A DNA stretch of 64,000 bases. Origin: Amphiscolops sp. MND2022 (Eukaryota). Within the stretch, counting starts at the first letter, position 1; the number at the start of each line of letters is the position of its first letter. The stretch spans positions 54,870,001-54,934,000 of the forward strand of contig OZ076411.1 of the NCBI GenBank assembly GCA_964187785.1, given 5' to 3'. This document shows, one piece after another, positions 38,900-64,000 of this stretch. The notes beneath the pieces are model-generated. The model was not told the origin of the DNA and made no database searches. It saw only the letters and a program-made list of their open reading frames with translations. The position numbers and the translations under genes are program-made.

Positions 38900-41800
38900 A
38901 TTTACTATACCCATTAGTTGACATGAGAAGCAAATGATCAACGATCATGACACCCAATGGAGACGTAGCCTGTGCAGTTTGATGGAAAATTAGTAAGTAT
39001 TATTGCTTGCTGTTCTTTGGACCTACTGCAAAAAAGTGGTCCTCCGCAGGGTTCTCTTGTAGACATCCGCAGGGTTTTCACGGACTTCCACAGTGTCCAG
39101 ATTTTTTTCTCCATAATCAACCTGGGTGAGTTGCCAATGGATTTCCAGCCATTCATGCTGTGTCCCCACCGATACAGTTTGATCATGAAATCCGTAATCG
39201 ACTGAAAGAATCAGAAGAATGTTTCGTTTCAAGATCTTTCATCTTTCGCAACTTCAATAGTGTAGTAGGTACAATTTGCGACCTTGGTAATATAATACAT
39301 TAAATTTATACTGGATACGTGTCAGTGACTCTTGCAACCTCACTGAAAACAGTCGGTATAGTTTGATCGAAATAAAGTTAGTAGCCTTGTCTTATGCATC
39401 CTCTTTTTGTGAAGCTAGAACTGGTCCTCCTCCCTGTCCGAAAGTTTTTCCCCTTTCATTCAGCATGAGGTATTCGCCCGAAGAATTACCAGCTATTCAT
39501 CAAGCCTATCGAGCAGTCCAGTTCTGATTGTGAAGTGCCATTGCAAAATTGCCTAATGCACTGAATGAATCAGTTGTCGTTTCGTCTCGATTCCATCTTC
39601 GGTTATGTAGAAGCCACAATTTGCTGACTTTATTACAATACATTGAACAATACTGGACCTGTGTTAGTATTTCGTGCGACCTTAATGACGTAACCTGTGC
39701 AGTTTGATTGTGAATAGTGATTTTGCTCATTGCTCGCCGTTGTTTAGACCTATGTGACAAATTGTTTTCCGTGGGTTTTTGAGGATATTCGCTGGTTTCT
39801 CATGGTGTTCCGCGGTGTCCTGAAATGTTTTCAAGTCTTTCCAGCCCTTCATCTTCCGTCCCCACCGATAATGTCTTGATCATGAAATGTGTAATGCACT
39901 GAATGAGTCAGTTTGACGTTTCGTTCTCGATCTTTCATCTTCGACTACTCCAATTGTGTAGTAGGTACAGTTCGCGACCTTCGTGAACAGAACTTGTACT
40001 GGATACGGGTCAGTGGTTCGTGTGACCCTACTGAAGGCGTAACCTGTGCAGTTTGATCCAAATACAGTTAGTAGCATTGTCTATTGCTTCCTCTTCTGTA
40101 GAGCTACCGCTAAATCTTGTTCTCCGTGGGATTCAATTATGTATATACGCGCAGTTCTCACTTAATTCCGTTGTATCCGGAAGTTTTTTTCATTTGTTTC
40201 AGCATGAGTGATTCACCCGAAGAAAAATACCAGGGATTCATCAAAGCTTTCGAGCAGTACGTTCCTAATGAAGTACCTAGAATGGATCAGTTGAGAGTCG
40301 TTTCGTCTCGAGATTCCATCTTCATCGATAGTGTAGGAGCTATAATTTGCTGAAGTACTTAAGTACTACAATACAATAAACATACTGGGTCCGTGTTAGT
40401 TATTCGTGCGTCCCTGATGACGTAGCTTGTGCAGTTTGATGGAAAGATGATTTTCCGTATTGTTTGCGCTGTTCGACCTACTGTGAAACTTGGTCTTCCG
40501 CAGGGTGTTCCTTTGAATGTCCGCGGGGTTCTCACGGAATTCCGCAGTGTCCTGTTTTTCCATGATTCAGCCTGAGTGAATTGCCCAAGGAATTCCAGCC
40601 ATTCATTTGCCCCACTGATACTGTCTGAATCATATAAGTGCGTAATGGACTGAGAACCTTAAAACGCTTCTGTAGATCCTTGAAGCTGGTCTGACAACTT
40701 TAAATCAATTGTTAGTGATAGATTTAACTCTGGTTAATCGTTCTCTTATCGTTACTTTTCTCTGTTGATGTTTTTTCTGCTCGAATTATCATTTAAATGG
40801 GTAATGTCGTTGAAGCTAGTGATTGTCAGAGATTTGGTCTTTGTTACGTGAAGCTCTTCAATCCTCTGAGAAACTACAGTTCAATGATTTTCTGCCGTTG
40901 CTTGATTCAGATATAGTCAAAATTTGCTTCTACAGTACTCGGACGTTTTGTTTTCGTATGTTTCAGCCTGTCATTTGCCCGCAGAGTATTCAGTTATTCA
41001 TCAGTTATATCAAGCAGTAGTCTCAATTATAAAGTGCCTAATGCACTGGATGAATCAGTTGAACATCGTTTGGCCTCGAAATCTTTCATCATAAATAGTG
41101 TAGAAGTTGAATTTCACTGCCTTCATTGTAATACATTAAACACCGAAAACCTGTCTGCCTTGTGCGACCGTAATGACATAATCTGTGCAGTTTGATCGAA
41201 TTATAGTTATTATTGCTTGCTGTTCTTGATAACTACTGTGAAAACTGGTCTTCCGCCAGGTGTCTATATAGATTTCCGCGGGTTTGTTACGGAATTCCGC
41301 AGTGTCCTGGAGTTTTTTCCATATGATTCATCCTGAATCAAGTTTCCAGCCTGAGTGAGAAATTCCAGCCAGTTCATCCTTTTTCTCCACTGATAGTCTT
41401 GATCAGAAAATGTGTTATGCACTGAATGAATCAGTGTAACGTTTCGTTCGAGATCTTTCACTCTGATTGTGTAGTAGGTACAGTTCGCGACCTTCGTGAA
41501 CAGAACTTGTACTGGATACGGGTCAGTGGTTCGTGCGATCCCACTGAAAACAACATGTGTAGTTTGATCAAATATCAGTTAGTAGCAGTTAGTATCCTTC
41601 TGTAGGACCTTGAAATTGGTCTAAGAACTTTGAATCAAACGTTAGTGATGAATCTAACTGGTTAATTTTTTATCGTTACTATTCTCTTTGTTCGACCATT
41701 TTTTTGCTCGAATAATGTTTTCGATGCTATTACTGTCCTTGGGGCTATAGTGGTCGTCAGATATTTGTTTTTTTTTCGGTTACGTCAAGCTATTCATGCC

Positions 41801-43185: not shown

Positions 43186-43517
43186 GAGGATCAAAAAATC
43201 CAGAAGCATATGACAGAAGTACTATCCGGTTCTAAAAGGAAAGCCACTCCAGCTAAAAGTGGCTCCGAATTTGAAGAGAGTTCCGATGGAGAAAGTTTGG
43301 AAAAAACAGCCAGAAGAGAAAAATTAGCCAGAAAGTCTGCTAAGAAAAAGAAGTCGAAGCATAACAGAAGCAGCGAAAAGAAGAAACAACATAAAGTCAA
43401 AAAATCTAAAAGAAAGCGCAACTCGTTAAGCAGCGGAGATGGGCATGATAGCTCTGAAGACAACTCCAGTGATTGCGATAGACGTACTTCAAGTCGTAGG
43501 AGAGCAACAAAAGTGAA
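43186..43517 (+). CDS. CHD1: CHD1 exon, Lys/Ser-rich N-terminal region
   Basis: ttcag/gtaaga sites; same frame as ORF 43210..43521; phase 2 matches the next exon. Confidence 0.85.
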
Positions 43518-46249: not shown

Positions 46250-48375
46250 ACATTTAGTTATTGTAATTGCAATTTCTCTAGGCTAGAAAGCCTCATAATT
46301 GAAAATCCTTTCGAACCGCATTGTTACTCTGATATAAATGTTATGGTCGAATTATGGTATGAATGGATATTCTCTTATCGAAGAGTGCACACCAATAAAA
46401 AGTCAACACCGGCGTTGCCTGCCCCCATGGGTTTTCAGTGCAACCTCCAACCGCCTCAACCGTTTGGAAACACTTCGCCGTAATTACGCCAGGAAACCTA
46501 CTGAATCCTTGCGCAGCAAACTCGAGTCAGAAGAAAATGTTTGTAAAGGAAAGGAAGACATCGATTTGGCGAATTATGAAGCGCGTCTATTTTCAACTAG
46601 AAACACAAAAGACATTTATAAGTACTTCAAAAGCTTACGCGGCTCAGGTCTCCCGACAGTCTTGAGATGAAATGCAATTGAGGACTTCGAAGACTACGAT
46701 AAAGCGCAACTTCTGAATAGCTACTTTTGCAGTCCTCAATACTGAAGGAGCTCCTCACCGGAGGGATACCTGTGACACAGTTGAAAAGATTTTTCCCATT
46801 ACAACTGAGGAAATTATTGCAGCAATATCGTCCTTGAGTGTTTCTAAAAGTAGGGGTCCTGATTCAGTTCCCCCAATTGTTTTAATCAAGTTGAAGCATG
46901 TTTTGGCACCATCTTTTCGGAATATTTTCAGGAATATGTCCCGGCTAAGAAAATTTCCAGATGTTTGGAAGCAGGGCGTCATCAGTCCAATTTTCAAAGG
47001 CGAAGGTAGCAGAGATGTTGAGAACTATAGCCCTGTGACTTTGCTGAATATTGCACCTGAATTGTTTGGACGGCTACTTTCCAAGTACTTATTCGATATA
47101 TTCAAATCTCATTGTGCTCCTTGGAACATGGATTCCTACCCCGACGATCAACATGGCTGGATTTTGTATATAAGACATATTCTGACTCAGAAGCCACCAT
47201 TGGATTATCACCACTGACTTCTCTTAAAGCCTTCGATAAAATCGATCATGAGATCCTACTCATGAAAGTGTCTCGGTTGGGCGTATCTACCGCGTTTCTT
47301 GGACTTCTCGAAAGTTAGCATTCTTGGACGAATGCAGAGCGTCAAGGTGAACAGATCAGTTTTGGAACCCGTTACTTCTGGGGTTCCACAAGGATCCATT
47401 GTAGTCCCTTTGTTGTTTATTTATGCGAACGACCTATCTTATTCGGTCTTATTCAGTATCTGTTTTTCTTATGCAGACGAGTTTAAACATCTTCACAATG
47501 ATCCAGACCTTAGCCCTGGCAGGCTCCAGCAAGACCTAAAAAGATTAGAAAATTGGTGTTCCTTCAATAAATTGTTCTTCAGTGCAAAGAAATGTTTTTT
47601 CTTGAACGTTAGAAATTGCCCAAATAATCTCACCATCGGAGAGGAAGCAACGAAGTCCCCGGACTCAGTTGAAGATCTCGGACTCATTACTAAACGCAAA
47701 GTTGTCATGGACGAACCATGTCGAATACAGAATCGAAGAAAGATCATGGTTTTTATCAGTTTTGCCGGAGAAACGCCGAGAAACCTGTCAATGGTCAACA
47801 AACTTGATCTCTACAATTTTTCCTATTCTTTAAGCCAGTGAATGCTGGAACCCGTCAAAATCTGACTTGAGATTGTTAGAGAACTTCAATAAGAAATTGT
47901 TGGAATGGATTGTATCCCAGAAGTCGTATTCACAGGTCTTATGCTACTTGAACGTTCTCCCGATTCCTTACTTTCAAGTCCTTTAAGATCTACTTACCTT
48001 ATCCAGTATCCTGATCGGGAATTTTGATTCAGATCTCCGACTTCGTAAAAATCAATCCATCCAGTCGCGAGGGTCCCTTAATCTTTCCAAGTATTAGATA
48101 CGAGCTGCAACGGTCCAATTACTGGTATCGTGCCTGCCATCGTGCGAATGTGGTACGGAATAAAGTGTTTCTGGAAACCAGAATTACTAAAAGGAAGAAT
48201 TCTGAACCTCATGTGGATTCATTTCAATAACTTTCTTTACGACCATTCAACCTGCACCTGGACTTTCATTTGCCTTTGTATCTTTTCGACTTCGAAACCC
48301 CATCTCTGAACTCTAGACTGTGTCATATTGGGGGAAATCCATTCCCTTATGCGTAAATTCTTTATAATAATATCA
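46250..48375 (+). mobile_element. Decayed L2/CR1-type LINE (intronic)
   Basis: KSRGPDSVPP...VWKQGVISPIFKG...NYSPVTLL, HGFLPRRST, KAFDKIDH, SGVPQGS, SYADEFK. Confidence 0.88.
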
Positions 48376-55910: not shown

Positions 55911-56063
55911 CAAATTGTCCGCGGAGGAGGCAAACTGTGGTTGCTGGATAAACTGCTGGTGAGGTTGTTTGAAACGAAGCATCGTGTGCTAATTTTCTCG
56001 CAAATGGTTATGATGCTCGACATTCTTGCTGAATATTTAACTCTGCGAAATTTTACATTCCAG
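55911..56063 (+). CDS. CHD1: CHD1 exon, start of helicase C lobe ([10 protein letters not shown]...[20 protein letters not shown])
   Basis: ttttag/gtaatt sites; the expected next exon (RLDG...) is absent from 56064-64000. Confidence 0.95.
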
Positions 56064-56569
56064 GTAATTATTCTTCAAACTTTTCGTGTGAGTGAGCAAA
56101 TATCCACGTGATGAGGAAACCAACTGGACGTCTAACAACGCTACATGGTAAATACATTTAGGAGCATGGTTGTCAAATTGAAGTTCGGCATATATGCATG
56201 TCATCGTCCACCACAACGATAATGTGTATATTCTCGCAACCCTACAATTGATGATAACCATGTGATGCTTTTTCCTCAAGGACTGAATTCAATTTTGACG
56301 ACTTCCGCAGGGTTCTGCATGGTGTTCCTCAGGGTTCTGAGATCCATTTGCTAAAAACGTGAAATACTTCGGTGCGATATGAGATATTCAGATTGTTCCA
56401 CGTTTTTTCCGAATCCTCCAATGATTTCTTGGGAAGCATATCGTATCAACCCATCATGGATACCTCAAAAATTTCAGCACTTTTTTGTGCCCTTTGGACT
56501 TTTTTTGGGAGCATTTGTTTTCATTGACTCTATTTGATGATCAGCAGAGATTATCGAAAGCAATGGCTG

Positions 56570-59500
56570 ATCGAATGAAACATGCAGCTTCCTTTGAGCA
56601 CTTCTATTCGTTCCATCCGTTCGGTACCCAGAATGTCTCAAGATGGTTTCGGACTGTCAATCTCGAACTTCTGACTTGACTTTTTGGTATTACGTTTCTG
56701 TGTTTAGGGTTGTGATCAGAGTATGTTCCTGATCATATCATGTTGAGCCCTGATCCGCTGGAATTTTTGCCACCGATCGCGCCTAAATCGATCCAGTTTT
56801 TCGATCGTTTTGGAATGTCTGTTTCGGGATAACCATGGGGTATAAGGACGGCATTTCAATTGGCTGACACTCGTGAATTCAAGTGGGATAGTCAACATTT
56901 CCCTCGCTCTGGCGTTTTTGAGTTTTAATAGAAAAAAAATTGTTTAGAAAACGCCCTGTAGTGACTCTGGGTTGTAATCCACGTTTAATATTTCAACCTG
57001 GTTTCGAAGGCGTCTGCATGGAAATGAGCTTCTTGATGTTTTCTACGGTCGAGTTGGTAGCATTTGCAACTGCGATCAACTTGCGCCTGAAAAGCTTCTG
57101 ATGTGATAAGCCGAATTTGTCTCGAAGTGTTCTTTGATTCAGGTTTCTTTTGGGTCTTTCGATTGCCTGACATTGGAGCAAAGTTTCTTCTCGGCTTTCA
57201 TTGAAAAGTCAGCAATTGGCATAGTAAAATTTGGTCAATTCAATTAGCGTGTGATTGACTTGTGTGCAATACCTAGCGTCAGATCTGGAAGTCAATCTTT
57301 CGTAAACACGAAAGTTCGATTCGCTGAAATTGCAGTTTTCCAGTCACATTTGTGAACTGACAAGTATTGTAGGTAAACGATACCCACCAATCAATGTATT
57401 TTATGGTGAATTTTCTAGCGCGTAGTTTGCCCCCATAGACGCACAGCACCGTAGAAATTGAGTAGGACATGAGTTTTGCCATTTTGACGTGAAGTCGAAC
57501 AGGACTCAAGTTAAGCTGTCGGATTGATATCCCTTTGAATTTACCATTTTTAGCGCCAATTCTTAACCGATTCGTTTTGATTGTTGATGCTCTCTGTTTT
57601 GTCATCTTTGAGCTCAGCTAAGTTCAGTTCCTGATTGCATTTTTGAGTTGACTGACATTTGTAAATGATTCTAATCTCGATTGTCACGGTTTATATCTTT
57701 GTCGTTCAGTAGTCGGATTTCTGAAACGGCAACGTAGTAGGAGAGCAATTGAAACGTACAGCTTCCTTCGAGCACTTCTGTTCGTTCCATCCTTTCTGTA
57801 ACCAAAGTCTCGATCAGTGTTGTTTCGGACTGTCAATCTCGAACTTCTTACTTGACTTTTTGGTATTTCGATTCTGTGTTTAGGGTTGTGATCGGATCGT
57901 GTTCCGGATCATAGCATGTGTTGAGCCCTGATCTGCAATTTTTGCCACCGATCGCGCCTAAACCGATCCACTTTTTCGCTCGTTTTGGAATGTCTATTTC
58001 GGGATAACCATGGGATATAATGACGGCATTTCAATTGGCTGACACTCGTGAATTCAAGTGGGATAGTCAACATTTCCCTCGCTCTGGCGTTTTTGAGTTT
58101 TAATAGAAAAAAAATTGTTTAGAAAACGCCCTGTAGTGACTCTGGGTTGTAATTCACGTTTAATATTTCAACCTGGTTTCAAAGGCGTCTGCATGGATAT
58201 GAGCTTCTTGTTGTTTTCTACGGTCGAGCTGGTAGCATTTGCAACTGCGATCAACTTGCGCCTGAAAAGCTTCTGATGTGATGAGTCGAATTTGTCTCGG
58301 AAGTGTTATTCTTTGATTCAGGTTTCCTTTGGGTCTTTCGATTGCCTGACATTGGAGCAAATTTTCGTCTCAGGTTTCATTGAACAGTCAGCAATTGGCA
58401 TGGTGAAATTTGGTCAATTGAATTAGCGTGTGTGTGATTGACTCGTGTGCGATGCCTGACAGATCTGGAAGTCTCAGGTTTCATTGAACAGTCAGCAATT
58501 GGCATGGTGAAATTTGGTCAATTGAATTAGCGTGTGTGTGATTGACTCGTGTGCGATGCCTGACAGATCTGGAAGTCATTCGAAATTACAAAAATTCGAT
58601 TCATTGAAACTGCAGTTTCTAAGTCACCTTTGTGAACTGTCAAGTATTTAGGTAAACGATATCTCCACCGCTCTACGTTTTTACGGTAGTTTCCAGCGTG
58701 TAGTTTGGCCCATAGACGCACAGCACCATGGAAGTTGAGTAGGACGTAAGTTTTGTCATTTTGACGTGCGGTCGAACAGGACTCAGTTGAAGCTCGAGGA
58801 TTGATAGCTCTTTGAAACCTACGAACCCTGAGCTCCGGTTCTTGGCTATTTTGTTTTGATAGTTGATGCTCTCTGCTTTCTCATGTTTGAGCTCGGCTAA
58901 GTTTACTTCCTGGTTGCATGTTTGAGTTAACTGACGTTTGTAAATGACTCGATATTGTCACGGTCACTAGCTTTGTCGCTGATTAGTCAGATTTCGAAAA
59001 CAACATCGTAGCAGTGCGAGAGCGATTGAAACGTACAGCATCCTCCGAGCACTTCTATTCGTTCTGTCTTTTCTGTAACCGAATTGTCTCGGTCAATATT
59101 GTTTCGGACTGTCAATCTCGAACTTCTGACTTGACTTTTTGGTATTACGCTTCTGTGTTTAGGGTTGTGATCGGAGTTTGTTCCGTATCATATCATTGTT
59201 GAACCCTGATCCGCGGCAATTTTTGCCACCGATCGCTCCTAAATCGATCCAATTTTTCGATCGTATTGGAATGTCTCTATTTCGGGATAACCATGGGATG
59301 TGAGGGCGGCATTTGAATTGGCTGACACTCGTGAATTCAAGTGGGATAGTCAACACTTCCCTCGCTCTGGCGTTTTTGGGTTTTCATTTAGGAAAATTTT
59401 AGAAAACGTTCTGTAGTGACTCTGGGTTGTAATCCACATTTAATCTTTCAACCTGGTTTCAAAGGCGTCTGCATGGATATAAGCTTCTTGTTTTCTACGG

Positions 59501-62500
59501 TCGAGCCGGTAGCATTTGCAACTGCGATCAACTTGCGCCTGAAAAGCTTCTGATGTGATAAGTCGAATTTGTCTCGAAGTGTTATTCTTTGATTCAGGTT
59601 TCCTTCGGGTCTTTCGATTGCCTGACATTGGAGCAAAATTTCGTCTCGGCTTCCATTGAGCAGTCAGCAATTGGCATGGTGAAATTTGGTCAATTGAATT
59701 AGCGTGTGTGTGATTGACTCGTATGCGATACCTGACATCAGATCTGGAAGTCATTCGAAATTACAAAAATTCGATTGCTTGAAACTGCAGTTTCTAAGTC
59801 CTTTGTGAACTGTCAAGTATTTAGGTAAACGATATCTCCACCGCTCCATGTTTTTACGGTAGTTTTCAGCGTGTAGTTTGGCCCATAGACGCACAGCACC
59901 ATGGAAGTTGAGTAGGACGTAAGTTTTGTCATTTTGACGTGCGGTCGAACAGAACTCAGGTGAAGCTCGGGGATTGATAGCCCTTTGAAACCTACGAACC
60001 CTGAGCGCCGGTTCTTGGCTATTTTGTTTTGATCGTTGATGCTCTCTGCTTTTTCATGTTTGAGCTCGGCTAAGTTTACTTCCTGGTTGCATGTTTGAGT
60101 TAACTGACGTTTGTAAATGACTCGATATTGTCACGGTCACTAGCTTTGTCGCTGATTAGTCAGATTTCGGAAACAACATCGTAGCAGTGCGAGAGCGATT
60201 AAAACGTACAGCATCCTTCGAGCACTTCTGTTCGTTCTATCCTTTCTGTAACCAAATTGTCTCGGTCAATATTGTTTCGGACTGTCAATCTCGAACTTCT
60301 GACTTGACTTTTTGGTATTACGCTTCTGTGTTTAGGGTTGTGATCGGAGTTTGTTCCGTATCATATCATTGTTGAACCCTGATCCGCGGCAATTTTTGCC
60401 ACCGATCGCGACTAAATCGATCCAATTTTTCGATCGTATTGGAATGTCTCTATTTCGGGATAACCATGGGATGTAAGGGCGGCATTTGAATTGGCTGACA
60501 ATCGTGAATTCAAGTGGGATAGTCAACACTTCCCTCGCTCTGGCGTTTTTGGGTTTTCATTTAAGAAAAATTTTAGAAAACGTTCTGTAGTGACTCTAAG
60601 TTGTAATCCACATTTAATATTTCAACCTGGTTTCAAAGGCGTCTGCATGGATAAAAGCTTCTTGTTTTCTACGGTCGAGCTGGTAGCATTTGCAACTGCG
60701 ATCAACTTGCGCCTGAAAAGCTTCTGATGTGATAAGTCGAATTTGTCTCGAAGTGTTATTCTTTGATTCAGGTTTCCTTTGAGTCTTTCGATTACCTGAC
60801 ATTGGAGCAAAATTTCGTCTCGGCTTCCATTGAACAGTCAGCAATTGGCATGGTGAAATTTGGTCAATTGAATTAGCGTGCGTGTGATTGACTCGTGTGC
60901 GATACCTGACATCAAATCTAGTAGTCATTCGAAATTACAAAAATTCGATTCCTTGAAACTGCAGTTTCTAAGTCACCTTTGTGAACTGTCAAGTATTTAG
61001 GTAAACGATATCTCCAGCGCTCTATGTTTTCACGGTAGTTTCCAGCGTGTAGTTTGGCCCATAGACGCACAGCACCATGGAAGTTGAGTTGGACGTAAGT
61101 TTTGTCATTTTGACTTGCGGTCGAACAGGACTCAGTTGAAGCTCGAGGATTGATAGCCCTTTGAAACCTACGAACCCTGGGCGCCTGTTCTTGGCTATTT
61201 TGTTTTGATCGTTGATGCTCTCTGCTTTGTCATGTATGAGCTCGGCTAAGTTTACTTCCTGGTTGCATGTTTGAGTTAACTGACGTTTGTAAATGACTCG
61301 ATATTGTCACGGTCACTAGCTTTGTCGCTGATTAGTCAGATTTCGAAAACAACATCGTAGCAGTGCGAGAGCGATTAAAACGTACAGCATCCTTCGAGCA
61401 CTTCTGTTCGTTCTATCCTTTCTGTAACCAAATTGTCTCGGTCAATATTGTTTCGGACTGTCAATCTCGAACTTCTGACTTGACTTTTTGGTATTACGCT
61501 TCTGTGTTTAGGGTTGTGATCGGAGTTTGTTCCGTATCATATCATTGTTGAACCCTGATCCGCGGCAATTTTTGCCACCGATCGCGACTAAATCGGTCCA
61601 ATTTTTCGATCGTATTGGAATGTCTCTATTTCGGGATAACCATGGGATGTAAGGGCGGCATTTGAATTGGCTGACAATCGTGAATTCAAGTGGGATAGTC
61701 AACACTTCCCTCGCTCTGGCGTTTTTGGGTTTTCATTTAAGAAAAATTTTAGAAAACGTTCTGTAGTGACTCTAAGTTGTAATCCACATTTAATATTTCA
61801 ACCTGGTTTCAAAGGCGTCTGCATGGATAAAAGCTTCTTGTTTTCTACGGTCGAGCTGGTAGCATTTGCAACTGCGATCAACTTGCGCCTGAAAAGCTTC
61901 TGATGTGATAAGTCGAATTTGTCTCGAAGTGTTATTCTTTGATTCAGGTTTCCTTTGGGTCTTTCGATTACCTGACATTGGAGCAAAATTTCGTCTCGGC
62001 TTCCATTGAACAGTCAGCAATTGGCATGGTGAAATTTGGTCAATTGAATTAGCGTGTGTGTGATTGACTCGTGTGCGATACCTGACATCAAATCTAGTAG
62101 TCATTCGAAATTACAAAAATTCGATTCCTTGAAACTGCAGTTTCTAAGTCACCTTTGTGAACTGTCAAGTATTTAGGTAAACGATATCTCCAGCGCTCTA
62201 TGTTTTCACGGTAGTTTCCAGCGTGTAGTTTGGCCCATAGACGCACAGCACCATGGAAGTTGAGTTGGACGTAAGTTTTGTCATTTTGACTTGCGGTCGA
62301 ACAGGACTCAGTTGAAGCTCGAGGATTGATAGCCCTTTGAAACCTACGAACCCTGGGCGCCTGTTCTTGGCTATTTTGTTTTGATCGTTGATGCTCTCTG
62401 CTTTGTCATGTTTGAGCTCGGCTAAGTTTACTTCCTGGTTGCATGTTTGAGTTAACTGACGTTTGTAAATGACTCGATATTGTCACGGTCACTAGCTTTG

Positions 62501-64000
62501 TCGCTGATTAGTCAGATTTCGAAAACAACATCGTAGCAGTGCGAGAGCGATTAAAACGTACAGCATCCTTCGAGCACTTCTGTTCGTTCTATCCTTTCTG
62601 TAACCAAATTGTCTCGGTCAATATTGTTTCGGACTGTCAATCTCGAACTTCTGACTTGACTTTTTGGTATTACGCTTCTGTGTTTAGGGTTGTGATCGGA
62701 GTTTGTTCCGTATCATATCATTGTTGAACCCTGATCCGCGGCAGTTTTTGCCACCGATCGCGCCTAAATCGATCCAATTTTTCGATCGTATTGGAATGTC
62801 TCTATTTCGGGATAACCATGGGATGTAAGGGCGGCATTTGATTTGGCTGACACTCGTGAATTCAAGTGGGATAGTCAACACTTCCCTCGCTCTGGCGTTT
62901 TTGGGTTTTCATTTAGGAAAATTTTAGAAAACGTTCTGTAGTGACTCTGGGTTGTAATCCACATTTAATATTTCAACCTGGTTTCAAAGGCGTCTGCATG
63001 GATATAAGCTTCTTGTTTTCTACGGTCGAGCTGGTAGCATTTGCAACTGCGATCAACTTGCGCCTGAAAAGCTTCTGATGTGATAAGTCGAATTTGTCTC
63101 GAAGTGTTATTCTTTGATTCAGGTTTCCTTTGGGTCTTTCGATTGCCTGACATTGGAGCAAAGTTTCGTCTCGGCTTTCATTGAACAGTCAGCAATTGGC
63201 ATGGTGAAGTTTGGTCAATTGAATTAGCGTGTGTGTGATTGACTCGTGTGCGATACCTGGTATCAGATCTGGAAGTCAATCTTTCGAAAATACGAAAGTT
63301 CGATTCGCTGAAATTGCAGTTTTCCAGTCACTTTTGTGAACTGACAAGTATTGTAGGTAAATGATACCCACCAATCATTGTATTTTGTGGTGAATTTTCT
63401 AGCGTGTAGCTTGCCCCCATAGACGCACAGCACCATGGAAATTGAGTAGGACACGAGTTTTGCCATTTTGACGTGAAGTCGAACAGGACTCAGGTTAAGC
63501 TGTAGGATTGATATGCTTTTTAAATTACCAATTTTGAGTGCCAATTCTCAACTGATTTGCTTTGATTGTTGATGCTCTCTGGTTTGTCATCTTTGAGCTC
63601 AGCTAAGTGCAGTTTCTGATCGCATGTTTGAGTTACCTGACTTTTGTAAATGATTCCAATCTCGATATTGTCACGTTAATAGCTTTGTCGTTCCTTGGTC
63701 GGATTTCCAAAACGGCATCGTAGCAGCTGGAGAGCGATTGAAACACACAGCTTCCTTCGAGCACTTCTATTCATTCCATTTCGGTACCCAAATAGTCTCG
63801 ATCAGTATTGTTCGGACTGTCAATCTCGAACTTCTGACTTGACTTTTTGGTATTACGCTTCTGTGTTTAGGGTTGTGATCGGAGTATGTTCCGGATCATA
63901 TCATGTAATGAGCCCTGATCCGCTGCAATTTTTGCCACCGATCGCGCCTGAATCGATCCAATTTTTCGATCGTTTTGGAATGTCTTATTTCGGGATAACC
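56570..64000. repeat. Intronic tandem array of ~1176-bp units, >=6 copies, continuing past the window end
   Basis: gagcacttct marker at 56596, 57770, 59047, 60220, 61396, 62572 and 63759; recurring ORFs in the track with 1173-1277 bp spacing. Confidence 0.97.

What the first reader, a model, noticed from the sequence alone, without database searches (positions are those of the whole stretch)
56570..64000. Kilobase-unit tandem array inside an intron of CHD1
Seen: at least 6.3 head-to-tail units of ~1176 bp begin ~500 bp after the donor at 56064, and the next CHD1 exon (expected RLDG... motif) is absent from the rest of the window. The unit is complex, non-low-complexity sequence and matches no RNA gene or transposon I recognise. 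Inference: an undescribed macrosatellite, or a rolling-circle or unequal-crossover-amplified element, in a core chromatin-remodeler gene, where it could affect CHD1 splicing or chromatin or produce small RNAs.
Basis: partly seen in the sequence, partly recalled or inferred. Interest (0 to 1): 0.72.

Follow-up and report, generated by a model that had tools for sequence, protein, structure and literature searches.

The report
Kilobase tandem repeat in CHD1 intron
One intron of the chromatin-remodeller gene CHD1 is almost filled by about seven head-to-tail copies of a unique, non-coding 1.2-kb sequence, an ordinary kind of locally amplified repeat, except that two very distant relatives have their own, unrelated repeat arrays in the same intron.

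Summary
A head-to-tail array of 6.76 units of about 1176 bp runs from window 56560 to 511 nt past the window end. It fills 89% of the 8,964-nt CHD1 intron that splits ...FTFQ|RLDG.... The next exon lies 1,028 nt beyond the window.

The unit occurs nowhere else in the 1.07-Gb assembly. It has no ORF with a Pfam match, no Rfam match, no tRNA, no terminal repeats and no excess RNA structure. Central units are nearly identical, edge units are 86-92% alike, and one unit is a mosaic. This is the signature of unequal crossing-over. A second assembly and k-mer contigs of four runs reproduce the array.

The unexpected result is comparative. Two relatives whose synonymous sites are saturated against this genome carry kilobase-unit arrays in the orthologous intron: 20.9 kb of a 24.3-kb intron, and about 6 kb of a 7.2-kb intron. 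I found no sequence similarity between the three arrays.

In this genome and the nearer relative, conserved intron-end blocks flank the array together with short unique spacers. Each block carries a rare doublet motif on its array-facing side.

Best reading: a non-coding, single-locus macrosatellite that is spliced out with the intron and has persisted by turnover since the common ancestor. No function is shown and no RNA data were available.

The parts
55911..56063 (+). CHD1 exon ending ...LRNFTFQ, the last exon before the array intron
   Evidence: Translation and tblastn of exon peptides. The donor GT is at 56064-56065.
56064..56338 (+). Conserved 5' block of the intron. It contains TATCCACGTGA (56101-56111) and ends with the motif doublet TCCGCAGGGTTCT / TCCTCAGGGTTCT (56304-56338).
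   Evidence: The block aligns with relative sp2 at 68-75% although 4-fold sites are saturated. The doublet pattern occurs only 5 times in the genome.
56339..56559 (+). Unique spacer between the conserved block and the array
   Evidence: No similarity to array units beyond shuffled controls. No alignment to sp2.
56560..57734 (+). Unit U1 (1175 bp), an old edge unit with a tail of type A
   Evidence: 86-92% identical to the other units. Its tail is 90% identical to the U6 tail and 78% to the U2-U5 tails.
57735..59015 (+). Unit U2 (1281 bp), with an internal exact 104-bp tandem duplication at 58367-58577
   Evidence: TRF reports period 104, 2.0 copies, 100% identity. Unit alignment.
59016..60188 (+). 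Unit U3 (1173 bp)
   Evidence: 97% identical to U4 and U5.
60189..61364 (+). Unit U4 (1176 bp), one of the youngest pair with U5
   Evidence: About 99.7-100% identical to U5.
61365..62540 (+). Unit U5 (1176 bp)
62541..63724 (+). Unit U6 (1184 bp), a mosaic with a head like U3-U5 (98%) and a tail like U1 (90%)
   Evidence: Region-wise identities.
63725..64000 (+). Unit U7, truncated after about 787 bp. It continues to window coordinate 64511 (L010:511). A unique spacer follows (64512-64815), then a conserved 3' intron block with a second motif doublet (64817-64853), then the RLDG exon from 65028.
38950..41600 (+). Older, decayed tandem array further upstream in the CHD1 locus. Periods are about 350 and 750 bp and copies are 60-85% alike. 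Each long unit carries two or three copies of the same TCCGCAGGGTTCT-like motif.

Best explanation
The feature is a non-coding, single-locus macrosatellite. A stretch of about 1.2 kb of intronic DNA was duplicated in tandem. Since then it has been expanded, partly homogenised and reshuffled by unequal crossing-over and gene conversion between misaligned units. It encodes no protein and no recognisable RNA gene, and it is not a copy of a transposon. It is transcribed as part of the CHD1 pre-mRNA and removed with the 9-kb intron (inferred). An array has probably occupied the core of this intron since before the three sampled lineages split. Its sequence has been replaced completely by neutral turnover, while the short intron-end blocks flanking the array region stayed under constraint (inferred from comparison).
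For: 1. Structure. There are 6.76 head-to-tail units with sharp ends. The centre units are about 100% identical, the next layer 95-98%, and the edge units 86-92%. U6 is a head/tail mosaic, and two tail types are only 78-80% alike. U2 carries an internal 104-bp duplication. The same pattern of a young centre and old edges is seen in the 20.9-kb array of relative sp2.

2. No gene content. No ORF exceeds 108 aa and none has a Pfam hit. There is no Rfam hit at E<=1 and no tRNA. The mean folding z-score is about 0 on both strands. No inverted repeats were found.

3. Not a dispersed repeat. The whole unit, its type-A tail, two conserved 31- and 45-mers (up to 3 mismatches allowed) and the right spacer match only this locus in 1.07 Gb.

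4. Real DNA. A second assembler gives the same array. Unitig depth and the unit-to-unit joint are seen in four runs.

5. Persistence. The orthologous FQ|RLDG intron of sp2 (24,345 nt) and sp3 (6.5-7.2 kb) is also 77-86% tandem array, with units of about 2.0-2.3 kb and about 1.48 kb. By contrast, 0 of 20 random 10-kb samples of this genome hold a kilobase-unit array.

6. Dynamics. The three sp3 contigs differ in array structure: intron lengths are 7188, 7124 and 6509 nt, and one contig has a 99.9% identical 812-bp duplication.
Against: Neutrality is assumed, not shown. No RNA, small-RNA or chromatin data exist for this organism in the tools. The head of the unit (about 720 bp) is clearly better conserved between old units (about 91%) than the tail (about 78%). 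Variable sites in the head are also over-dispersed (variance/mean 2.6; the three longest invariant runs have P about 0.01). That could reflect constraint rather than conversion tracts. Three lineages with an array in one intron, and conserved motif doublets on both sides of it in two of them, is more order than a purely neutral model predicts. The oldest detectable duplications in each lineage (65-78% identity) are much younger than the lineage splits, so common descent of the arrays cannot be demonstrated.
Confidence: 0.68

Rival explanations
1. The array is a positionally conserved, functional macrosatellite. What is selected is the presence of a repeat array in this intron, not its sequence. 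Possible roles are as a chromatin or architectural element, as a regulator of CHD1 transcription or splicing kinetics, or as a buffer against the antisense nested gene. This would be analogous to DXZ4 or Firre in mammals, which keep their position but not their sequence.
For: Arrays sit in the orthologous intron in three lineages whose 4-fold sites are saturated (0.67-0.76 different), with nested-gene identity down to 26%. Each array has been renewed after the splits. The arrays of this genome and sp2 share an unusual composition (A 0.23, T 0.35-0.37, AT skew about -0.2) that other CHD1 introns lack. Conserved intron-end blocks, each carrying a rare motif doublet on its array-facing side, lie a few hundred nt to about 2.4 kb outside the array on both sides in both species. 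Kilobase arrays are rare in random samples. The DXZ4 precedent is described in PMC3491370.
Against: No k-mer of 10 nt or more, and no excess of 8- or 9-mers over reversed controls, is shared by the units of the three arrays. Profile HMMs find nothing either. So there is no conserved per-unit binding site, which is the feature that defines the DXZ4-like cases. The sp3 array lacks the composition skew and the motif doublets. Array length varies 3.5-fold between lineages. This genome is rich in tandem arrays according to earlier notes. A neutral array can persist by turnover alone.
Confidence: 0.15
2. The array is a tandem set of small-RNA or non-coding RNA genes (snoRNA, miRNA, piRNA precursors or a lncRNA), one per unit, processed from the CHD1 intron or from an antisense transcript.
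For: The head of the unit is better conserved than the tail, and invariant runs of 22-31 nt exist in all seven units. One 100-nt stretch (60315-60414, minus strand) folds with z = -4.0. Other tandem RNA-gene arrays (vault RNA, snoRNA, tRNA) are noted elsewhere in this genome.
Against: No Rfam hit at E<=1 in this array or in the relatives' arrays. The mean folding z is about 0. The one low-z stretch consists of short GATC-rich palindromes, not a miRNA-like stem, and it is one of about 100 windows tested. No sequence or motif is shared between lineages. No run on record as RNA holds the region.
Confidence: 0.07
3. The array is an inserted concatemer. Candidates are a rolling-circle product (Helitron-type), a re-integrated extrachromosomal circle, or the internal repeat region of a decayed transposon.
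For: The unit count is not an integer, the ends are sharp, and unique spacers lie on both sides. A 35- to 39-nt direct repeat (the motif doublets) brackets the whole block, which superficially resembles a duplicated target.
Against: No other copy of the unit or the right spacer exists in the genome. There is no transposase, Rep or RT similarity, no terminal inverted repeats and no hairpin end. The bracketing doublets are orthologous and already duplicated in sp2, so the bracket predates the present array. Three independent insertions into one intron are unlikely.
Confidence: 0.07
4. The array is an assembly artefact, either a collapsed or expanded repeat or a chimeric join.
For: U4 and U5 are nearly identical, so their exact number could be mis-assembled. 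All read data come from one sample.
Against: Units differ by 3-14%, which is enough to order them. A second assembler gives the same 6.76 units. The flank-to-array and U1-to-U2 junctions and the 4-5-fold depth are present in the k-mer contigs of four runs. Relatives show the same architecture.
Confidence: 0.03

Closest known systems
Macrosatellites (kilobase-unit, single-locus tandem repeats such as DXZ4, D4Z4 and RNU2 in mammals)
   Same: The unit is over 1 kb and of complex sequence, arranged head to tail at a single locus. It shows layered homogenisation by unequal exchange. Structural variation between haplotypes or individuals was seen in relative sp3.
   Different: The array is small (about 7 units, 8 kb) and entirely intronic. 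Its GC is ordinary (42%) and it is not a CpG island. It has no embedded gene (D4Z4 has DUX4, RNU2 has U2). The organism is an invertebrate, not a mammal.
DXZ4 / Dxz4 and Firre: tandem arrays that keep their position but not their sequence (PMC3491370, PMC6985041)
   Same: The array sits at an orthologous position in deeply diverged lineages with no alignable unit sequence. The neighbouring genes and exons are conserved.
   Different: The mammalian cases retain a CTCF motif in every unit. Here no motif is shared between the arrays. The only conserved motifs lie outside the array, in the intron-end blocks. No binding or 3D-contact data exist.
Satellite DNA born from an intron (CapA, about 1.5-kb monomers, derived from an intronic sequence; bioRxiv 10.1101/213868)
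   Same: An intronic sequence of about 1-1.5 kb is amplified in tandem.
   Different: CapA spread to become an abundant, multi-locus satellite. This unit has stayed at its birthplace, and its single-copy progenitor is not identifiable.
Tandem arrays derived from mobile elements, as noted elsewhere in this genome
   Same: Same genome, similar unit size (about 1 kb), single locus, head to tail.
   Different: No parent element lies beside this array. It has no similarity to any other genomic sequence and no captured exon.

Membership tests
Macrosatellite / kilobase-unit single-locus tandem repeat | Head-to-tail copies of a complex unit of about 1 kb or more | tested here: met
   6.76 units of 1173-1281 bp, 86-100% identical.
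Macrosatellite / kilobase-unit single-locus tandem repeat | Confined to one locus or a few loci, not dispersed | tested here: met
   Only this locus matches in 1.07 Gb, by BLAST and by patterns with up to 3 mismatches.
Macrosatellite / kilobase-unit single-locus tandem repeat | Copy-number or structural polymorphism between alleles | tested here: inconclusive
   In this species, U1-specific unitigs have about half the flank depth and a variant unitig exists, which suggests differing haplotypes, but contigs cannot count copies. In relative sp3 the three contigs differ in array structure.
Dispersed satellite DNA family | Many arrays or a large genomic share of the same monomer | tested here: not met
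   Single locus of 8 kb.
Transposable element or Helitron-derived array | Other copies of the unit or a parent element; coding remnants (transposase, Rep, RT); characteristic termini or target duplications | tested here: not met
   No other copies. No Pfam hit in any unit ORF. No inverted repeats. No similarity to neighbouring sequence. No dedicated transposon library such as Dfam or Repbase was available.
Tandem RNA-gene array (tRNA, snoRNA, vault, 5S, SL RNA, miRNA cluster) | Each unit holds a match to an RNA family or a conserved, stable structure | tested here: not met
   Rfam at E<=1 gave 0 hits in this array and in both relatives. ARAGORN found 0 genes. Mean z about 0. Novel RNA families cannot be excluded without RNA data.
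DXZ4/Firre-like architectural repeat | Orthologous position kept while the sequence diverges | tested here: met
   Same FQ|RLDG intron in three lineages. No blastn or nhmmer similarity between the arrays.
DXZ4/Firre-like architectural repeat | A conserved factor-binding motif in every unit across species | tested here: not met
   No unit-conserved k-mers are shared above reversed or reverse-complement controls.
DXZ4/Firre-like architectural repeat | Bound by an architectural protein, or forms a contact boundary | not testable with these tools
   No ChIP, ATAC or Hi-C data are accessible.

The most novel reading that the evidence does not exclude
A repeat array in the FQ|RLDG intron of CHD1 is itself a conserved trait of this animal clade. 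It is continually renewed by local amplification inside a cassette whose ends are fixed by conserved intron blocks, each carrying a rare, sense-oriented TCCGCAGGGTTCT doublet. On this reading the array acts through its repetitiveness rather than its sequence, on chromatin, on transcription or splicing kinetics of CHD1, or on the antisense nested gene. The motif, which also marks an older array upstream in the same gene, may be the site of a factor that promotes or delimits the amplification.
Probability: 0.15. Interest if true: 0.7.

Novelty: new member of a known kind. Interest (0 to 1): 0.42.

Why it matters
Taken alone, the array is one more locally amplified intronic repeat in a genome that has many, and it needs no special explanation. 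The comparison makes it worth a note. Lineages so diverged that synonymous sites are saturated all have a kilobase-unit array in the same intron of a core chromatin remodeller. In two of them, conserved intron-end blocks carrying a rare motif doublet flank the array. If the persistence is selected, this would be an invertebrate, intragenic counterpart of the mammalian arrays that keep position but not sequence (DXZ4, Firre), in animals where no such case is described to my knowledge. If it is neutral, it is a clean natural example of how long a small array can survive by turnover. Either way, anyone annotating CHD1 in this clade should expect a repeat-filled, length-variable intron here.

Tried and rejected
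1. TRF on the region found only a 104-bp internal duplication, because its period limit is 500. The array was defined with the repeat finder and anchors instead.

2. Coding potential. All ORFs of 60 aa or more were listed. Seven from this array and four from the sp2 array were scanned against Pfam, with nothing below the curated cut-offs.

3. RNA genes. Rfam in E-value mode, ARAGORN, and a sliding-window fold scan on both strands. One z = -4 window is made of short palindromes and was judged unconvincing.

4. Transposon or satellite origin. Whole-genome DNA and pattern searches with the unit, the type-A tail, conserved words and the right spacer found this locus only. Unit against the rest of the 74 kb found nothing.

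5. Homology between the arrays of the three lineages. blastn with word size 7, relaxed scoring, nhmmer --max with unit profiles in all directions, and shared conserved k-mers were all negative.

6. Decayed outer units in the spacers. Local alignment against shuffles gave z about 0.

7. Derivation of the unit from exon B or the adjacent intron, prompted by the pseudo-exon duplication in sp2. Negative.

8. RNA bridging of the intron ends. Duplex energies of the first and last 300 nt are not better than shuffles (z -1 to -1.9). An 11-nt inverted repeat containing CACGTG exists but carries no covariation.

9. Depletion of sense-strand poly(A) signals in the arrays. None beyond base composition.

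10. More relatives. The nested-gene searches found only the three lineages.

11. Organism identity was not resolved. Earlier notes disagree (stony coral, acoel). The nested gene resembles B-box/NHL proteins that are commonest in molluscs.

Exons were searched one by one.
Full report
**1. The observation**

Direct-repeat families with start-to-start spacings of 1173-1187 bp tile window 56559-64000. TRF missed them because its period limit is 500. It reported only an exact 104-bp duplication at 58367-58577.

Exact anchors of 17 and 27 nt recur seven times. The next 10 kb of the chromosome (L010 = window 64001-74000) shows the last, truncated unit ending at about L010:511. The array is therefore window 56560-64511: 7,952 bp, 6.76 units. 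Starts are U1 56560, U2 57735, U3 59016, U4 60189, U5 61365, U6 62541 and U7 63725.

The CHD1 exon ends at 56063 (...LRNFTFQ) and the intron opens with GT at 56064. The next exon (RLDGSITG...) starts at L010:1028 after an AG. The array fills 89% of an 8,964-nt intron. I searched CHD1 exon by exon and did not build a joined spliced model.

**2. Is it real DNA?**

An independent metaMDBG contig of the same species (L026, ENA ERZ25074608) has the same units in the same order.

Logan contigs of four runs of one sample (X1-X4) cover the exon, the intron and the left junction in one contig. All four show the U1-to-U2 head-to-tail joint. A unitig shared by the central units has 4.0 times (X1) and 4.8 times (X3) the depth of the single-copy flank. 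U1-specific unitigs have roughly half the flank depth and a variant unitig exists, which suggests that the two haplotypes differ in the array.

These data are probably from the same animal as the assembly. They exclude an assembler artefact but are not independent biology.

**3. What the unit is not**

- It has no ORF longer than 108 aa. Seven ORFs gave no Pfam match above cut-off.
- There is no Rfam match at E<=1 and no tRNA.
- No inverted repeats were found.
- Folding z-scores average 0 on both strands. One stretch (60315-60414, minus strand, z = -4.0) consists of short GATC-rich palindromes.
- The unit, its divergent type-A tail, two conserved words (up to 3 mismatches allowed) and the right-hand spacer match nothing else in the 1.07-Gb assembly.
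- Nothing else in the surrounding 74 kb matches either.

It is therefore not a dispersed satellite and not a recognisable transposon or RNA-gene array. No transposon library was available.

**4. Internal history**

U4 and U5 are about 100% identical. U3-U6 heads are 97-98% identical. U2 is about 95% identical to the centre. U1 and U7 are 86-92% identical to the others.

The first roughly 720 bp of the unit is about 91% identical between old units. The last roughly 440 bp exists in two types (A in U1 and U6, B in U2-U5) that are only 78-80% alike. U6 is a mosaic of a B-type head and an A-type tail.

A young, homogenised centre, older edges and mosaic units are the textbook outcome of unequal crossing-over and conversion. 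Variable sites in the head are moderately clumped (variance/mean 2.6; the three longest invariant runs have P about 0.01). This can be explained by conversion tracts and is not strong evidence of constraint.

The array ends are sharp. The 221-nt and 305-nt spacers outside it show no decayed units.

**5. Relatives**

The antisense nested gene downstream (L010:1856-3316, a B-box/NHL-like protein) and the RLDG exon served as handles to fetch orthologous loci from public assemblies.

| Lineage | Loci | Exon B aa identity | Nested-gene aa identity | Intron length | Array |
|---|---|---|---|---|---|
| This genome | window + L010 | - | - | 8,964 nt | 7.95 kb, units about 1176 bp |
| sp2 | L025/L054/L055 | 99% | 68% | 24,345 nt | about 20.9 kb |
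| sp3 | L027/L028/L029 | 95% | 26% | 7188 / 7124 / 6509 nt | about 6 kb, four units of about 1.48 kb |

- In sp2 the repeats are higher-order: 2251-2265 bp at 98-99% identity, 1975 bp at 96%, and edge units at 74-91%.
- In sp3 the units are only 76-78% alike. One contig has a 99.9% identical 812-bp duplication, so the array is structurally polymorphic.
- A more distant group (L030-L033, exon B 87%) has a split exon, an intron of about 1 kb, no array and no nested gene.
- Four-fold degenerate sites of exon B differ at 0.67-0.76 between the three lineages, which is saturation.

Neutral sequence cannot be expected to align at that divergence, and the arrays show no similarity by blastn, by unit-profile nhmmer or by shared conserved k-mers. 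Within each array the oldest detectable duplications (65-78% identity) are far younger than the splits. Each array has therefore been renewed since the lineages separated.

None of 20 random 10-kb samples of this chromosome, and none of the other roughly 56 kb of the window, holds a comparable young kilobase-unit array. Three of the 20 samples hold short-period satellites. Coincidence is therefore unlikely, though the baseline is small and earlier notes show that the genome has many arrays.

**6. The frame around the array**

Between this genome and sp2, intron sequence aligns only near the intron ends:
- the first roughly 275 nt, at 68-75% identity;
- the last roughly 210 nt, at 75% overall, with the 3' 75 nt near 95%.

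The array-facing end of each block, where alignment with sp2 stops, is a doublet of the motif TCCGCAGGGTTCT, 22-26 nt apart on the sense strand (56304-56338 and 64817-64853). The second left copy shares the same G-to-T change in both species, so the left and right doublets were already separate in the common ancestor.

Genome-wide counts:
- the exact 15-mer: 29 times;
- the 13-mer: 91 times;
- the doublet pattern: 5 times, two of which are these.

The same motif occurs in twos and threes in each long unit of an older, decayed array at window 38950-41600. The CHD1 locus has 11 sense hits with up to 2 mismatches in 74 kb, against 2 in 200 kb of random sequence.

Both blocks also carry the same 11-mer containing CACGTG, in opposite orientation. 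Intron-end duplex energies are not better than shuffles. In sp2 the right block and part of exon B were themselves duplicated 793 bp upstream. sp3 lacks clear copies of the motif.

**7. Reading**

The simplest account (confidence about 0.68) is a neutral, single-locus macrosatellite that arose in the core of this intron before the three lineages split. It has been kept alive by unequal exchange, while the splice-proximal blocks stayed under selection.

The main rival (about 0.15) is that the array's presence is itself selected, as for DXZ4 or Firre in mammals (PMC3491370, PMC6985041). In its favour are the triple positional conservation, the shared T-rich composition of this array and the sp2 array and the conserved bracketing motifs. 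Against it are the lack of any per-unit conserved motif, the 3.5-fold length range and the absence of the skew and the motif in sp3.

The RNA-gene, inserted-concatemer and artefact readings are each weakly supported, at 0.07 or less.

**8. Limits**

No run on record as RNA holds the region. Expression, small RNAs and splicing therefore remain untested.

The organism was not identified. Earlier notes guess a stony coral or an acoel worm, and I did not test either guess.

Noticed in passing
window 56304-56338 and L010:817-853 (= window 64817-64853); also window 39043-41308: A rare sense-strand motif, TCCGCAGGGTTCT, occurs as doublets 22-26 nt apart on both sides of the array, conserved in relative sp2. 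It occurs as doublets or triplets in the units of an older array upstream. The doublet pattern occurs only 5 times in 1.07 Gb. Other doublets lie at C2:1095055, C6:23337946, C7:71165230, C8:60471253, C9:62033665 and C12:6621150. Its function is unknown. It may be a protein-binding site linked to local amplification.
   Followed up: partly
window 56064-56338 and L010:816-1027: The two ends of the intron are as conserved between this genome and sp2 (68-75%; the 3' 75 nt about 95%) as coding exons, although synonymous sites are saturated. Both carry the 11-mer TATCCACGTGA / TCACGTGGATA in opposite orientation (an E-box-like CACGTG). The 3' block is full of stop codons and could be a regulatory element or a poison exon.
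   Followed up: partly
window 38950-41600: A second, older tandem array lies in the CHD1 locus, upstream of the exon at 43210. Periods are about 350 and 750 bp and copies are 60-85% alike.
   Followed up: partly
L010:1856-3316 (-) and L010:3520-3675 (-): An intact gene is nested antisense in the CHD1 introns just downstream of the array: a 486-aa ORF with B-box/NHL-like features, plus a RING-like C3HC4 exon. It is conserved in sp2 (68% aa) and sp3 (26% aa) and absent from the array-free outgroup loci.
   Followed up: partly
L025:12860-13024 and L025:13151-13226: In relative sp2 the conserved 3' intron block and the first half of exon B were duplicated 793 bp upstream, leaving a decayed pseudo-exon (50% aa identity) inside the intron.
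   Followed up: partly
window 46834-47841: A fragment of a non-LTR retrotransposon reverse transcriptase (ORFs with a ...GVPQGS...LLF...ANDL... motif) lies in another CHD1 intron.
   Followed up: no
L034 (C3:2007493-2010000), L037 (C3:15500001-15510000), L042 (C3:38000536-38001895): Three of 20 random 10-kb samples of this chromosome are partly or wholly short-period satellite, with base periods of roughly 108, 180 and 84 bp. This confirms that the genome is rich in tandem repeats.
   Followed up: no
L030-L033: In the more distant group, the exon homologous to the RLDG exon is split by an extra intron after about 24 codons. Two distinct CHD1 loci occur per sample, which could be haplotypes or paralogues.
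   Followed up: no
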